A stretch of DNA of 63,757 nt, counting the filler, from Octopus bimaculoides (lineage: Eukaryota), in NCBI RefSeq assembly GCF_001194135.2. It is 4 parts of 4 records of this genome, joined end to end, with 100 filler letters (N's around TTAATTAATTAA, not from the genome) between each part and the next. Parts side by side here need not be neighbours in the genome. Positions count along the whole stretch, not along the records: positions 1 to 26,588 come from NC_068990.1; 3 more parts are not named here. One strand, written 5' to 3'. This document shows, one piece after another, positions 8,741 through 12,499 of the stretch; position 1 is the first letter of the stretch, and the number at the start of each line of letters is the position of its first letter. The notes under the pieces are model-generated. The model was given only the letters and a program-made list of their open reading frames with translations. It was not told the origin of the DNA and searched no databases. A program made the position numbers and the translations under genes.

Positions 8741-8810
8741 ATTTGGAACTCAGTATTAGATGCTCCAAATGCATTTGGATACCAACCACAAACAGATCAT
8801 CAGGGGAACA
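8741..8810 (-). ncRNA. Candidate box C/D snoRNA, copy 1
   Basis: TGATGA (8802-8797) and CTGA (8753-8750), 69/70 identical to 12430-12499. Lies within a 165-nt gtaagt...ttgcag intron-like segment (8830-8666), box D 84 nt from the 3' splice site. Box C lacks the 5' purine and there is no terminal stem. Confidence 0.55.
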
Positions 8811-9087
8811 TTTTTTTGTTTTATACTTACACGGGTAGAATTATTCTGTTCTTTTTCCTTTATTTATTTAGACAAACTAATATAAGTAGAGTCAGAGGCC
8901 TGGTTCATATGTACAATACAATGGCTCTGAAGCAAAGATTTAAACATACGGCCTTGTCGTCAGTAGTCTAATATCTTAAACTGCAAGTCATTGTTCTGCC
9001 AGAGAGTCTAGAATAAAGAGTCACAAAATCAAAATATCGTCTGTGATAAAAGAATGGTAAAAGCATTGCCAGCAAGTCAGTACTTAC

Positions 9088-9159
9088 TGGATATGAAATA
9101 ACAACTTTAATTCTTTGAATTATGAAGTCCATGACTCCTAACCAACAACAGAGGTAAGG
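9088..9159 (-). other. Candidate exon of a minus-strand host transcript
   Basis: ctttctttcattctctttaag acceptor and CCA|gtaagt donor, 72 nt. Confidence 0.3.
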
Positions 9160-9186
9160 CTTAAAGAGAATGAAAGAAAGCCTTTC

Positions 9187-9240
9187 AAAGTAGGTCAGTA
9201 TGATCTGGTAGCTAAAAGTAGGTCAGTATGATCTGGCAGC
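9187..9240. repeat. 28-bp tandem duplication
   Basis: aaagtaggtcagtatgatctgg(t/c)agc twice. Confidence 0.9.
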
Positions 9241-10104
9241 GAAAACTGTTGAATTTTTGGAAGGAAGTAGCTGGGATTTAATTTCACTTAATTCACTTAA
9301 ATATAAGTTAACATGTTTTAAAGGTGAGGTTAAATTTCGACAGAAATAAACTACTGAGGTACTCCAGATTGTTACGCCTGGACCCATATTAGTCTTGAAA
9401 ATGTTGCAGAATCATTCTACCATGAACCAAAAATGCCTAAAATTCTTTTATATAAAATACCCTCTCAAAATTCTGATATAATACCATCTCTTTTTTAAAT
9501 CAGTTTATCCAGATGATAAAGTCAAAAAAATAAGCAAAACAATTTAAAATACCCCTTTGGGAAATCTACCTCTTGTTCATTTTCTTCATCTATGAAACAT
9601 GACTCTTGTCCTCAATACCATCTCTGTGTTTATGATTCCCAAAAGAATGCTTCCATTGAACTATTCAATGAATTTCACAGAGTAAGAAGAAAAAAATTTA
9701 GGTTTCTGCCTTATTTTATGAAATGACAAAAAACACTTTTTCACTGGCAAAGTCCATTCAAACAAGCTTTTATTTGGGAAAAGACTAAACCAATAATCTA
9801 TAGAGCAAAAGAAATATTCTACTTCACAGCCAGGGACCATCTCCAACCAACAGCAAAAATTCTTTACAGTTACCAGATTTGATGTCCTATGAGATGCACA
9901 AATGCATAGGATGCACCCTAGCTGAGGTGATACTTTTGTAAAATATATTACCACTAAAATAATGTTTTAATTCCTCCACTTACCTGTATAACTTAATATT
10001 ATTACCAGTAATTATAAGCAGCCTTCAAATTGGTTTTCTGTTCCTTGGTCAATCAGAAACAGAGATTGCCATGCTACTCATAAACCTACTTGGAAGTTCA
10101 ATTA

Positions 10105-10500
10105 TTTGGCATTGAGCTTCACAGAGGCAAATTGGCCGAGTTCCTTTAAAGTGTTGGGCCTCACAGAGAGGCAAAGTGGCTGAGTTCCTTTTGAGTGTTG
10201 GGCCTCACAGAAGCAATGACCAAAACTTTTGGCATTATGTTGTGCTTGAAAAGAAGACCTATCAAACCATACAAAATCACAATTGCAGCAGATACTGGTG
10301 TCACACAAATGGTCCCCATTCTGGTGGCACATAAAAGCACTCATTACACTCTCAGAGTAGTTGGCATTAGGAAGGGCATCCAGCCATAGAAAACCATGCC
10401 AAATCAAACTGGTGCAGCCTTCCAGCTTACCAGCCCTGGTCAAACCGGCCAACCCATACCAGCAGGGACAATGGACGTTAAATGATGATGATGATGATGA
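10105..10500 (+). mobile_element. SINE-like family B
   Basis: Internal ~44-bp tandem unit, ttggcattaggaagggcatccagcc, and ggacgttaaa(tga)n tail. Confidence 0.8.
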
Positions 10501-10535
10501 TATATGTATTATGTATATAGATATATATCTATATA

Positions 10536-10580
<45 letters not shown>

Positions 10581-12429
10581 GTGTGTGTGCGTGCGTGTGC
10601 GTGTGTGTGCGTGTGTGTGTGCGTGTGCAATGGACTTTATTCAGTTTCCATCTACCAAATTAGGTTGGCTCGGGACTAGGTAAGAAACTTGCTCAAGGTG
10701 TTGCACAATGTAAATGAGAGACATTACCAGCTTTGCTCCAACCCCCTGTCACACCCTTTTACACCACACAACTCATAACCTCTCTTAAACACAATAACCA
10801 TAATTTTACCTTTTCTAAATAAGTAGCAGTCAAATACCCTCAAACCGCACCCAAATGGTTCCCATTAGGAAATGAAACAATGAACAAAAAAGATAAAATG
10901 TATTACACAAACTAGCAGACAGCCACCTGGAAGGCAATGTTTGTGTTAGTGTAAGATAATGCAATCTTATATCTCATTAAAAAGACAAGATGGTCACAGC
11001 TCGAATGATTTGGATTGGAGATTTTGGCTGGTTCATGTATGATCTGAGATTAAACAAGAACAAGTCCTACTCCAATTATTCTGTTATTTCTACATTGAGT
11101 TGCTTTATCTTCAAAGATAGACATCATTGAATTTTATGGCTGAGTGCATGATGTTAAATAGAGAAACCATCAGTACAAATATTCAGTTTGAATATTTAAA
11201 AAGCATGTTTCTGATTTTACTGACAAATTCAGTCTATGTAAGTGTGAGGAACTGACCAAAAAATGCAAAAGAAATTTATACAAAATTTCTAAGAATAATG
11301 CATATTTTGTTTTTTGAGAAAATAACTGTTTCTGTTTCAAGAGGTTTTGATTTGTCCTCTTATCAAATGTGGCATTAATACTATGATTACATTAAACATA
11401 CTTTCCTAAAGCTTGTATTCTGTATTCATCTTTGAATTTCATGGGAACCTAGAGTCCCTTAGGATTTCCAAACAGGAAACAATATTTACTAACTTTTGAA
11501 TCTACACACCCTGTAGTTCATGTTACATTACTTCATGTTCCTATGTATTTTTATTTTTTTGTCTCCTACTTATGTTATTTTTTGTTTAAGTTTTGTTCTG
11601 TTTTTTTAAGGGCCTTTTGATATTCCAATTCCTTATACTGTTTCCTCTGCCCCTTTCTTTTAGTTACTAACCCTGTACTTAGGGAAAAACTTATGATATG
11701 TGTTAGTTCCCAACAATAGAAAAAAAATTAGAAAAGCAAAACATCACAAAAAACATAACATCATCTTCAAACCGTATCAATATCCAAAAAGAAAAACTTC
11801 ACAACAAAACAAATATTTATTGCTGAGTCTTAGCAAATTTCAAGTTAAAACAGTTGTACACTTTCTGGAATGTTCTTGTTCTATTATATCACAGTATATT
11901 TAGCAAATCTTATTTGTTGTTGCAGTTTTATTTTATCTGCATTTAATATCTTCAGATTTCAAATAAAATACAAAATCACTGTAGTGCGTGTGTATATATG
12001 TATAAACATTTATTGTTTCCTACCAACATTCAGCAACAAAAAGGTTTGAAATTTCTGATTTTGCTAAATTTAATTGCTGTTTAATTGATTGCCTGACTTT
12101 CGTAATATCCCAATAACTACTAATTTTTAGTCCAAATTTTAGTAAAAATTACAAAGAAAGCAAAAACAGTTTTTAGTTTGTATTTTTTCTTATAAAAAAA
12201 ACAGATTTTTTGTTTTATATATAAAAAAATATGTGCCTTATGTGTTCAGTTAGATGTATGACTACTACACATAGATTATCATTATTGAGTCAGCTTCTAG
12301 TATAGTGGTTAGTCGATTACAGTAATTTGCAGTGTTACTAGTTATGATATACAGAACACATGTAGTGGAATATTAAGTTAAACACCAGTCCAAGCATACA
12401 GTTCCTACATACGTGCCACTATCACAGCT

Positions 12430-12499
12430 ATTTGGAACTCAGTATTAGATGCTCCAAATGCATTTGGGTACCAACCACAAACAGATCATCAGGGGAACA
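12430..12499 (-). ncRNA. Candidate box C/D snoRNA, copy 2
   Basis: TGATGA (12491-12486) and CTGA (12442-12439). One substitution versus copy 1. Flanks unrelated and no TSD. Confidence 0.55.

What the first reader, a model, noticed from the sequence alone, without database searches (positions are those of the whole stretch)
8741..12499. Duplicated 70-nt element with box C/D architecture: candidate tandem intronic snoRNA pair
Seen: 8741-8810 and 12430-12499 are 69/70 identical with abrupt borders, unrelated flanks, and no TSD or TIR. The minus strand reads ..cccc-UGAUGA-ucuguuugugguugguaucc-aaaugcauuugg-agcaucuaaua-CUGA.., with a central 14-nt palindrome kept in both copies. Copy 1 has box D 84 nt from a strong 3' splice site. 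Established: vertebrate intronic C/D snoRNAs cluster about 65-100 nt upstream of the 3' splice site, and paralogues often occupy neighbouring introns. Inference: a conserved small RNA. From recalled, unverified 18S consensus, GAGCAUCUAA could pair with UUAGAUGUUC and GUUUGUGGUUGG with CUAACCAUAAAC, both needing G-U pairs. Against: no terminal stem, box C lacks the 5' purine, and C'/D' are degenerate, so it may be an orphan guide or a different RNA class.
Basis: partly seen in the sequence, partly recalled or inferred. Interest (0 to 1): 0.75.

Follow-up and report, generated by a model that had tools for sequence, protein, structure and literature searches.

The report
Probable octopus box C/D snoRNA pair
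Two near-identical 70-base copies, 3.7 kb apart in octopus-like DNA, look like an unannotated small nucleolar RNA of the ordinary box C/D kind. They lack the usual closing stem, and I could not confirm a target, expression or conservation, so this is a reasonable but routine candidate.

Summary
Window 8741-8810 and 12430-12499 are 69/70 identical, the flanks are unrelated, and there is no third copy. On the minus strand each copy has a perfect UGAUGA 8 nt from its 5' end and a CUGA 9 nt from its 3' end. No other 70-mer in the window, on either strand, has that arrangement.

The element is absent from a 21-kb sample of Octopus vulgaris DNA that does hold the window's real interspersed repeats.

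The 14 nt ending 2 nt upstream of CUGA pair without a break (9 Watson-Crick, 5 G-U) with the conserved 18S segment UUAGAUGUUCUGGG, in the correct register. Chance gives this in 0.2-2% of controls.

Evidence against:
- There is no terminal or external stem, which is a defining feature tested and not met.
- C'/D' boxes are unrecognisable.
- No Rfam family matches.
- The second proposed guide is at chance level.
- Neither predicted site is methylated in the Drosophila or Arabidopsis maps.
- Only copy 1 has convincing splice signals.
- Conservation and expression could not be tested.

Verdict: probably (about 0.6) a lineage-specific C/D snoRNA pair, either an orphan or a guide for one new 18S site. 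It would be a new member of a known kind, of modest interest.

The parts
8741..8810 (-). Copy 1 of the 70-nt element (candidate C/D RNA; RNA nt 1 = 8810, nt 70 = 8741)
12430..12499 (-). Copy 2 of the 70-nt element, 69/70 identical (G12468 instead of A8779; RNA nt 32 is C instead of U)
8797..8802 (-). Box C, UGAUGA (RNA nt 9-14), preceded by C instead of a purine; copy 2 equivalent 12486-12491
8750..8753 (-). Box D, CUGA (RNA nt 58-61); copy 2 equivalent 12439-12442
8756..8769 (-). Putative D guide, UUUGGAGCAUCUAA (RNA nt 42-55). It forms 14 contiguous pairs (9 WC + 5 G-U, -14.5 kcal/mol) with 18S UUAGAUGUUCUGGG, starting at position 3 upstream of box D. Position 5 falls on the A of UUA*GAUG. 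Copy 2 equivalent 12445-12458.
8782..8794 (-). Putative upstream (D') guide, UGUUUGUGGUUGG (RNA nt 17-29). It forms 13 contiguous pairs (10 WC + 3 G-U) with 18S CUAACCAUAAACG, but no recognisable D' box follows and the match is at chance level. Copy 2 equivalent 12471-12483.
8764..8779 (.). Central palindrome TCCAAATGCATTTGGA (16 nt in copy 1; 14 nt, 12454-12467, in copy 2). As RNA it is a weak 6-bp hairpin (-3.6 kcal/mol). The only difference between the copies lies at its base. Its 3' arm overlaps the D guide and can also pair with the 3' tail GUUCCAAAU.
8811..8818 (-). Weakly similar 8-nt 5' extension (CAAAAAAA versus CAAUAAAC at 12500-12507; 6/8 identical)
8666..8830 (-). Candidate 165-nt intron holding copy 1. 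It runs from GTAAGT at 8830-8825 to the acceptor cuuuggauuucuugcAG ending at 8666, with 82 nt between box D and the AG. This is inferred from motifs only. A second GTAAGT at 8715-8710 lies inside it.
8831..8926 (-). Candidate 96-nt non-coding exon upstream of that intron (acceptor uuuaaaucuuugcuucAG just upstream of it; stop codons in all three frames). Inferred from motifs only.

Best explanation
Each copy is most likely a gene for a short (about 60-70 nt) box C/D small nucleolar RNA, read from the minus strand. It would be released from a non-coding or unannotated host transcript by splicing and exonucleolytic trimming. This is clearest for copy 1, which sits in a candidate 165-nt intron.

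Boxes C (UGAUGA) and D (CUGA) would fold into a kink-turn that recruits SNU13, NOP56/58 and fibrillarin. The 14 nt ending two bases before box D would pair with 18S rRNA at UUAGAUGUUCUGGG and direct 2'-O-methylation of the A in UUA*GAUG. If that pairing is fortuitous, the RNA is an orphan.

Shown here: the duplicate, the boxes and their uniqueness in the window, absence from the abundant repeats, and the in-register 18S complementarity.

Inferred: transcription, processing, snoRNP assembly, methylation and the host gene.

The two copies are so alike, with unrelated flanks, that they probably arose by a recent short-patch copying event or are kept alike by gene conversion. Long independent conservation is less likely.
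For: - The pair is 69/70 identical, with abrupt borders and no similarity in the flanks.
- UGAUGA lies 8 nt from the 5' end and CUGA 9 nt from the 3' end, on the same strand. Of about 52,800 70-mers on both strands of the window, only the two copies have this layout.
- The best Rfam hits, though far below threshold, are all C/D families on the minus strand: snoZ118, snoR77Y and SNORD66.
- The D guide pairs 14 nt without a break with conserved 18S, starting at position 3 from box D. Shuffled guides reach this in 0.2-0.3% of trials, and 4 of 240 natural CTGA-upstream 19-mers do so. The duplex energy is -14.5 kcal/mol.
- The whole inter-box region gives 4 conserved runs of at least 13 pairs against sense rRNA. 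Shuffles give 0.34 on average (P(>=3) = 0.0125), and antisense rDNA gives none.
- The same 18S stretch is a real C/D target in plants: Arabidopsis Um1448, guided by AtsnoR19, lies 1-2 nt away.
- The element is not in 20.9 kb of O. vulgaris DNA, which does hold many copies of the window's SINE-like and LINE repeats. There is no third copy in the window.
- Copy 1 lies between a perfect GTAAGT and a pyrimidine-rich acceptor, with box D 82 nt from the AG. By established knowledge (Hirose and Steitz 2001, my recollection) this is the preferred spacing for intronic C/D snoRNAs.
- The single substitution between the copies avoids both boxes and both guide segments.
Against: - There is no terminal stem: the immediate flanks give +0.7 kcal/mol. 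The flanks offer no external stem better than shuffles, about half of which do as well.
- Box C lacks the 5' purine, and no C' or D' box is recognisable.
- The fold is not more stable than shuffles (z = -0.5 and -1.9), and its best stem encloses box D.
- No Rfam family comes close: the best is 15 bits against a threshold of 48.
- The D guide needs 5 G-U pairs in 14. Its predicted site is not methylated in Drosophila or Arabidopsis, and the human and yeast columns of the Arabidopsis table show nothing there.
- The upstream guide is at chance level: 14.5% of shuffles and 4.6% of natural 22-mers match as well. Its site is not methylated in those species either.
- Copy 2 has no strong acceptor downstream.
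- No coding exon and no other credible snoRNA lies on that strand.
- There are no homologues in any collection I could scan, but those collections hold essentially no cephalopod DNA.
- The 8- and 9-nt tails beyond the boxes are longer than typical mature ends.
Confidence: 0.6

Rival explanations
1. A neutral, recent short duplication, such as a templated patch inserted during break repair or a fragment of a low-copy repeat. In this reading the box C and box D motifs are coincidental, and no RNA is made or used.
For: - Identity of 99% with completely unrelated flanks points to a recent event, not long conservation.
- There is no terminal or external stem, no C'/D' boxes and no Rfam match.
- The structure is no better than shuffles.
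- The upstream guide is at chance level, and the D guide is reached by 1.7% of natural controls.
- The region is rich in transposons and repeats.
Against: - Chance must supply UGAUGA and CUGA at the right ends of the same strand. My estimate from base composition is about 2e-4, and no other locus in about 52,800 windows has the layout.
- On top of that, chance must supply an in-register 14-nt rRNA match.
- The duplicated unit begins and ends just outside the two boxes, which a random patch would not be expected to do.
Confidence: 0.2
2. A sequence derived from a snoRNA but no longer functional. One or both copies would be dead copies (pseudogenes or RNA-templated copies) of a genuine C/D snoRNA located elsewhere in the genome.
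For: - The borders lie close to where a processed RNA would end.
- There is no terminal stem or supporting flank.
- Copy 2 lacks splice signals.
- No host exons were found.
- Mobile copies of snoRNAs are known in mammals (snoRNA retroposons; my recollection).
Against: - There is no 3' poly(A) tail and no target-site duplication on the minus strand. The A-rich run lies on the 5' side.
- The boxes are intact in both copies.
- Copy 1 has a good intronic context.
- Both copies are in the same orientation, only 3.7 kb apart, which suits local duplication within one transcription unit better than random reinsertion.
Confidence: 0.1
3. A different functional element. It could be a DNA-level regulatory module built around the perfect palindrome TCCAAATGCATTTGGA (an ATGCAT core, as in POU-type dimer sites). 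Or it could be another class of small RNA, for example one with the Sm-like GUUUGUGG followed by a hairpin.
For: - The 14-16 nt perfect palindrome is kept in both copies.
- GUUUGUGG resembles the U1 Sm site AAUUUGUGG (my recollection).
- C/D membership fails on the terminal stem.
Against: - The Sm-like motif lacks the nearly invariant A.
- The hairpin is weak, at -3.6 kcal/mol.
- The two copies share no upstream promoter-like sequence.
- Rfam finds no snRNA-like or other family on either strand.
- A 16-nt binding site does not explain 70 nt of identity.
Confidence: 0.05
4. The shared core of a dispersed interspersed repeat, for example a SINE central domain or a very short MITE. The two copies would be independent insertions.
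For: - Mollusc SINE superfamilies share conserved central domains with different heads and tails (PMC4758252, listed; title and abstract only).
- The window is dense in repeats.
Against: - There is no TIR, no TSD and no tRNA-like head or simple-repeat tail.
- Identity of 99% in the core with zero similarity outside it is not what SINE families show.
- No copy occurs in a 20.9-kb O. vulgaris sample where the window's real SINE-like family occurs at least 5 times, and there is no further copy in 26.6 kb. This sample can only exclude families of roughly 1e5 copies or more.
Confidence: 0.05

Closest known systems
Canonical intron-encoded box C/D snoRNAs with paralogues in neighbouring introns of one host gene (for example the snoRNAs of the vertebrate GAS5 and SNHG1/UHG host genes)
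   Same: - Perfect UGAUGA and CUGA near the two ends of a 70-nt unit.
- A guide directly upstream of box D that pairs with rRNA from position 3.
- Two same-strand copies a few kb apart.
- Copy 1 lies 82 nt upstream of an acceptor AG, in a short candidate intron flanked by a candidate non-coding exon.
   Different: - No terminal stem and no external stem.
- No recognisable C'/D' boxes.
- C instead of a purine before box C.
- The guide is rich in G-U pairs.
- The predicted target is not a known methylation site.
- The host transcript is unproven, and copy 2 has no clear splice context.
AtsnoR19 (Arabidopsis C/D snoRNA guiding 18S Gm1434 and Um1448; PMC8583080)
   Same: It targets the same conserved 18S stretch, CCCUUAGAUGUUC. 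Um1448 lies 1-2 nt from the adenosine selected by the octopus D guide.
   Different: A different nucleotide is selected. AtsnoR19 also guides the universally conserved G1490-equivalent, for which the octopus RNA has no guide. Rfam detects no sequence relationship. The site is plant-specific in the published maps.
Orphan tandem C/D clusters SNORD115 / SNORD116 (mammals)
   Same: Near-identical snoRNA copies are repeated within a non-coding host transcript, the flanks are much less conserved than the snoRNA, and there is no confirmed rRNA target.
   Different: Those clusters have tens of copies in regular repeat units with recognisable terminal stems. Here only two copies are seen, and there is no repeat-unit homology at all.
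snoRNA retroposons (snoRTs) of mammals
   Same: A snoRNA-sized unit is copied without its flanks.
   Different: There is no poly(A) tail and no target-site duplication. The copies are adjacent and in the same orientation.
Rfam families snoZ118/Z120/Z121, snoR77Y and SNORD66 (the best cmscan hits)
   Same: Box C, box D and overall length align.
   Different: Scores of 11-15 bits against thresholds of 32-52. The guides are unrelated and the terminal-stem columns are not satisfied. These are not memberships.

Membership tests
box C/D snoRNA | Box C (RUGAUGA) near the 5' end | tested here: met
   A perfect UGAUGA lies at RNA nt 9-14 in both copies. The preceding base is C, not a purine, which is a minor deviation.
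box C/D snoRNA | Box D (CUGA) near the 3' end, on the same strand and at a suitable distance from box C | tested here: met
   CUGA lies at nt 58-61, with 43 nt between the boxes. The layout is unique to the two copies among about 52,800 70-mers of the window.
box C/D snoRNA | A terminal stem of about 4-5 bp bringing boxes C and D together, or an external stem in the flanking intron | tested here: not met
   The immediate flanks UGUUCCCC / GUUCCAAA give +0.7 kcal/mol. The best pairing between the 40 nt upstream and the 60 nt downstream is no better than shuffles in either copy (fraction of shuffles at least as good: 0.52 and 0.53). The MFE folds show no C/D-closing stem.
box C/D snoRNA | Internal C' and D' boxes | tested here: not met
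   No CUGA-like tetramer follows the upstream guide (the candidates AUCC, UCCA and CCAA match 0-2 of 4 positions). There is no UGAUGA-like C' box; AUGCAUU matches 3 of 7. These boxes are often degenerate in eukaryotes.
box C/D snoRNA | An antisense element of at least 10 nt directly upstream of box D/D', complementary to rRNA or snRNA, with the target paired to the 5th nt upstream of the box | tested here: inconclusive
   D guide: 14 contiguous pairs (9 WC + 5 G-U) with conserved 18S, starting at position 3. P = 0.002-0.003 from shuffles, but 4 of 240 natural controls match as well. Upstream guide: 13 pairs, at chance level. The targets were taken from 13 rDNA units of unidentified eukaryotes, not from octopus rRNA. 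snRNAs were not tested.
box C/D snoRNA | The predicted target is an experimentally known 2'-O-methylated nucleotide | tested here: not met
   Neither site appears in the Drosophila 18S list or the Arabidopsis 18S list with its human and yeast equivalents. The nearest known site is plant Um1448, 1-2 nt away. No mollusc map was found.
box C/D snoRNA | A match to a curated family model (Rfam) | tested here: not met
   No hit at gathering score. The best is snoZ118 at 15.1 bits against 48. Rfam covers mollusc snoRNAs poorly, so this counts only weakly against.
box C/D snoRNA | An intronic position about 60-100 nt upstream of a 3' splice site in a host transcript (the usual arrangement in animals) | tested here: inconclusive
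   Copy 1: GTAAGT lies 20 nt upstream and a pyrimidine-rich acceptor AG lies 82 nt after box D, giving a 165-nt candidate intron. Copy 2: no acceptor of that quality within 440 nt. There is no transcript evidence, and no coding exon was found.
box C/D snoRNA | A stable small RNA bound by fibrillarin, NOP56/58 and SNU13 | not testable with these tools
   No expression or CLIP data for cephalopods are reachable from here.
box C/D snoRNA | Conservation of the boxes and guide at orthologous loci in related species | not testable with these tools
   All routes failed: ORF-based search, pattern scans, look-ups of neighbouring ORFs and a host-exon search. The DNA collections on hand hold no searchable cephalopod genomes.
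interspersed repeat (SINE / MITE) | Many dispersed copies, plus terminal inverted repeats, target-site duplications, or a tRNA-like head and repeat tail | tested here: not met
   There is no TIR or TSD. There are only 2 copies in 26.6 kb and none in 20.9 kb of O. vulgaris, where the window's real repeats recur. The sample is too small to exclude a family of fewer than about 1e5 copies.
snoRNA retroposon | A 3' poly(A) tract and flanking target-site duplication | tested here: not met
   On the minus strand the 3' flanks are CUUUAUUGG and AGCUGUGAU. The only A-rich run lies 5' of copy 1, and there are no direct repeats.

The most novel reading that the evidence does not exclude
The pair belongs to a cephalopod-specific family of orphan, stemless C/D-like RNAs that spread locally within a non-coding host transcript, in the manner of SNORD115/116. 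Instead of methylating rRNA, they would act on other RNAs, for instance by modulating splicing or A-to-I editing of neural transcripts. The G-U-rich rRNA complementarity would then be incidental.
Probability: 0.07. Interest if true: 0.65.

Novelty: new member of a known kind. Interest (0 to 1): 0.3.

Why it matters
If real, it adds an unannotated, Rfam-invisible C/D snoRNA to the very thin catalogue for cephalopods. It also predicts one new 18S 2'-O-methylation, on the A of CCCUUA*GAUG, next to a site that plants methylate. That prediction can be tested directly by RiboMeth-seq on octopus rRNA.

It would also be a clean example of a C/D RNA that accumulates without a terminal or external stem. 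And the near-identical pair with unrelated flanks would show how snoRNA paralogues spread between introns.

None of this would change current understanding. Its value lies in annotation and in one concrete, checkable prediction.

Tried and rejected
**Routes to related DNA**
1. I joined the element-spanning ORFs of all open frames into one protein query, to catch ORFs called over related elements in other assemblies. Nothing scored.
2. Scans with a box C + two-guide pattern found 0 matches in JGI metagenomes and 0 in IMG/VR. Exact sub-strings found 0 in prokaryotic genomes and 0 in IMG/VR. These collections hold essentially no cephalopod DNA, so the negatives say little.
3. Exact look-ups of two neighbouring window ORFs found nothing on record.
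The 1163-aa query covering 7629-13620 found no homologue.

**Literature**

5. Full-text searches for the element's sequence gave 0 papers. Searches for the two rRNA target strings gave only PCR primers. No paper deals specifically with cephalopod snoRNAs. One literature query failed on syntax.

**Readings I rejected**

6. A multi-snoRNA cluster. The SNORD110-like hit at 23530-23596 lacks boxes C and D, and my own scan found no other candidate with a stem and a guide.
7. An old duplication with decayed flanks. No flank similarity exceeds shuffles.
8. The 28S match (RNA nt 39-51 with GUGCUCUGAAUGU, 12 of 13 units, -17.2 kcal/mol). It is out of register with box D, lying at positions 7-19, and it uses the same guide segment as the 18S match, so it is not independent evidence.
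9. Exon, H/ACA RNA, pol III transcript on the plus strand, miRNA, and snRNA or U7-like RNA. There are no shared splice sites at the borders. The plus strand does not fold (z = +0.45). A T-run follows copy 1 only. Rfam finds nothing on either strand.
10. Assembly artefact. The N gap at 12956-12996 lies 457 nt from copy 2, but the flanks differ, so the copies are not a collapsed or duplicated contig.

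
Full report
**Observation.** The two stretches 8741-8810 and 12430-12499 are identical at 69 of 70 positions; the one difference is A8779 versus G12468. Eight further bases on one side match 6/8. 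Beyond that, a pairwise alignment of +-200 nt shows nothing. Local alignments of 400- and 1500-nt flanks scored against shuffles also show nothing; the near flanks give z = 1.5 and -0.9. The one higher score (z = 3.3, downstream 1500 nt) is a non-collinear T-rich stretch. There are no terminal inverted repeats and no target-site duplications. A pattern built from box C and the two proposed guides hits only these two places, with 0.00 expected from shuffles. nhmmer and blastn-short find no third or diverged copy in the 26.6 kb.

**Where the window comes from.** The long ORFs are transposon remnants. Pfam confirms a Tc1-type transposase HTH at 728-1305 and a reverse transcriptase with a PHD-like finger at 26182-26586. 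Their closest named relatives are Octopus bimaculoides (82% identity) and O. vulgaris (73%) proteins. The window's SINE-like repeats recur many times in a 20.9-kb piece of O. vulgaris chromosome OX597814.1.

**Anatomy on the minus strand**. The RNA reads UGUUCCCC-UGAUGA-UCUGUUUGUGGUUGGUA(U/C)CCAAAUGCAUUUGGAGCAUCUAAUA-CUGA-GUUCCAAAU. A perfect box C core lies 8 nt from the 5' border and a perfect box D lies 9 nt from the 3' border, with 43 nt between them. I asked how often this layout occurs in this DNA. Among about 52,800 70-mers on both strands, the only ones with UGAUGA 4-13 nt from the start and CUGA 4-13 nt from the end are the two copies. From base composition I estimate about 2e-4 for a random 70-mer. 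This is the strongest single argument that the element is, or derives from, a box C/D RNA.

**What is missing.**
- There is no terminal stem. The bases flanking the boxes (UGUUCCCC / GUUCCAAA) give +0.7 kcal/mol.
- The 40 nt upstream and 60 nt downstream of each copy offer no external stem better than shuffles; about half of the shuffles do as well.
- The minimum-energy folds are not unusual (z = -0.5 and -1.9). Their best helix (AUUUGGAGC / GUUCCAAAU) puts box D in a loop.
- No C' or D' box can be recognised.
- Rfam gives nothing at gathering score. In 151-nt slices it gives only weak C/D hits: snoZ118 at 15 bits against 48, then snoR77Y and SNORD66.

**Targets, tested on real rRNA.** I fetched 120 eukaryotic rDNA contigs from metagenomes through the conserved 3' end of 18S. 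Thirteen of them carry complete 18S and 28S. An ungapped antisense search finds three recurrent matches:
- RNA nt 42-55 pairs with 18S UUAGAUGUUCUGGG: 14 contiguous pairs, 9 Watson-Crick and 5 G-U, in 6 of 13 units.
- RNA nt 17-29 pairs with 18S CUAACCAUAAACG: 13 pairs, in 9 of 13 units.
- RNA nt 39-51 pairs with 28S GUGCUCUGAAUGU: 13 pairs, in 12 of 13 units.

The 28S match is out of register with box D and uses the same guide segment as the first match, so I do not count it.

The inter-box region as a whole has more conserved complementarity to sense rRNA than shuffles do. It gives 4 runs of at least 13 pairs against a mean of 0.34 (P(>=3) = 0.0125), and none against antisense rDNA. One of those four runs hits unrelated places and is just G/U promiscuity.

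The first match has the correct geometry. It starts at position 3 upstream of CUGA, so position 5 selects the A of UUA*GAUG. Anchored nulls give P = 0.002-0.003 for shuffled guides. However, 4 of 240 natural 19-mers upstream of other CTGA motifs in the window match as well. The match is suggestive, not decisive.

The second match has no D' box after it and is at chance level. A run of at least 13 occurs in 14.5% of shuffles and 4.6% of random natural 22-mers.

Duplex energies are -14.5 and -16.5 kcal/mol.

**Do the predicted sites exist elsewhere?** The Drosophila map lists 18 sites in 18S. There is nothing after Gm1621 until Am1806. I take Gm1621 to be the equivalent of human Gm1490, since the paper lists it as conserved in all five comparison species. 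Between Am1061/Cm1096 and Cm1303 there is also nothing (PMC11014333). The Arabidopsis map, with its human and yeast equivalents, lists Gm1434, Um1448, then Um1554; and Am978, Um1013, then Am1188 (PMC8583080). Neither predicted nucleotide is a known site. Plant Um1448, guided by AtsnoR19, lies 1-2 nt from the predicted A, so that rRNA stretch is accessible to C/D guides. I placed these positions by distance from the 18S 3' end in the fetched rDNA and by my recollection of the human sequence, so they could be off by a nucleotide.

**Context.** On the minus strand, copy 1 lies 20 nt after a perfect GTAAGT (8830) and 82 nt before the AG of the acceptor cuuuggauuucuugcAG. This defines a 165-nt candidate intron, preceded by a 96-nt candidate exon with stops in all frames. 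Four of the seven minus-strand GTAAGT motifs in the window lie between 8715 and 9983. Copy 2 has no acceptor of that quality within 440 nt. Minus-strand ORFs from 7629 to 13620 have no protein homologue, so any host is non-coding or unannotated. No other credible snoRNA is present. The 'tandem intronic pair' reading is thus supported by motifs for copy 1 only.

In 20.9 kb of O. vulgaris DNA, the window's SINE-like family occurs at least five times and its LINE fragments several times. The 78-nt element has no match longer than 11 nt. This excludes membership in the abundant repeats. It cannot exclude a family of fewer than roughly 1e5 copies. Identity of 99% with totally unrelated flanks is not what SINE cores or MITEs look like.

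**How the pair arose.** Such high identity with no flank homology argues against an old duplication held only by selection. A recent short-patch copy or gene conversion between paralogues is more likely. Retroposition is not supported, since there is no 3' A-tail and no duplication of the target site.

**Judgement.** The C/D layout, the borders just outside the boxes, the in-register 18S match, the low copy number and the intron-like setting of copy 1 together make a box C/D snoRNA the best explanation (about 0.6). The failed terminal-stem test, the absence of C'/D' boxes, the G-U-rich guide, the unprecedented target sites and the lack of any expression or conservation data keep it a candidate. 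The rivals are:
- a neutral short duplicate with chance motifs (0.2);
- dead snoRNA-derived copies (0.1);
- another functional element built on the palindrome, or another RNA class (0.05);
- a dispersed-repeat core (0.05).

It works like, and probably is, a C/D snoRNA, but I do not assign it to any named family. If real, it is a new member of a known kind, and its interest is modest.

**Limits.** No cephalopod genome, rRNA, snRNA or small-RNA data could be searched by DNA. The rRNA targets come from unidentified eukaryotes. The metagenome, viral and prokaryote scans are negatives from collections that would not be expected to hold the element.

Noticed in passing
window 23530-23596 (-): A SNORD110-like Rfam hit (21.3 bits against a threshold of 64). 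It has a 4-bp terminal stem (CUAC/GUAG), an internal CUGA and a UGGAUGU. However, box C reads UGAAAA and box D reads CUAGA. The 19-mer upstream of its internal CUGA pairs 14 nt (7 of them G-U) with the universal 18S GGCAAGUCUGGUGC, with position 5 on the first A. It lies on the same strand as the 70-nt copies. It is probably chance or a decayed snoRNA.
   Followed up: partly
window 8715-9983 (-): Four of the seven minus-strand GTAAGT hexamers in the 26.6 kb lie here (8715, 8830, 9087, 9983). This hints at a multi-exon, non-coding transcript on the minus strand around copy 1. There is no transcript evidence.
   Followed up: partly
window 4105-4426, 10155-10498 (inverted), 13145-13282, 15351-15513, 24879-25025: A SINE-like interspersed repeat family, with copies 70-82% alike. 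It occurs at least five times in a random 20.9-kb piece of O. vulgaris chromosome OX597814.1 (L121). Further repeats at 2191-2543 and 25115-25234 also recur there.
   Followed up: partly
window 728-1305 (+); 1-150 (-) and 26182-26586 (+): A frameshifted Tc1-type transposase remnant (Pfam HTH_Tnp_Tc3_2, HTH_23). LINE reverse-transcriptase fragments sit at both ends of the piece. The 3' one carries a PHD-like zinc finger and is 82% identical to an O. bimaculoides RT protein.
   Followed up: yes
window 6751-7503 (-), 21367-22026 (-), 24361-24540 (-), 6098-6298 (+): These ORFs carry motifs I recall from mariner-type transposases (for example HPPYSPDLAPSDYHLF), plus a Cys-rich ORF typical of DNA-transposon proteins. 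None scores in Pfam at E <= 0.01, so the labels rest on recollection only.
   Followed up: partly
window 10483-10660; also 1453-1526, 5346-5410, 16136-16262, 20254-20313, 21297-21350: Compound (TA)n/(CA)n/(GT)n microsatellites produce sub-threshold Rfam hits to mir-297, mir-466, mir-3149, mir-1277, SCARNA7 and sno_ZL1. These are low-complexity artefacts, not RNA genes.
   Followed up: yes
window 12956-12996: A run of 41 N (a scaffold gap) lies 457 nt from copy 2. The flanks of the two copies differ, so the duplicate is not an assembly artefact.
   Followed up: yes
window 10120-10207: A tandem duplicate of a 44-nt unit (89% identity) lies inside or next to one SINE-like copy.
   Followed up: no
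window 8741-8810 / 12430-12499 (-): Both ends of the RNA carry the same pentamer, GUUCC (nt 2-6 and 62-66). The internal GGAGC (nt 45-49) can pair with either one. AUUUGG (nt 41-46) can pair with CCAAAU at nt 33-38 or at nt 65-70. This gives mutually exclusive helices that overlap the D guide. Their significance is unknown.
   Followed up: partly
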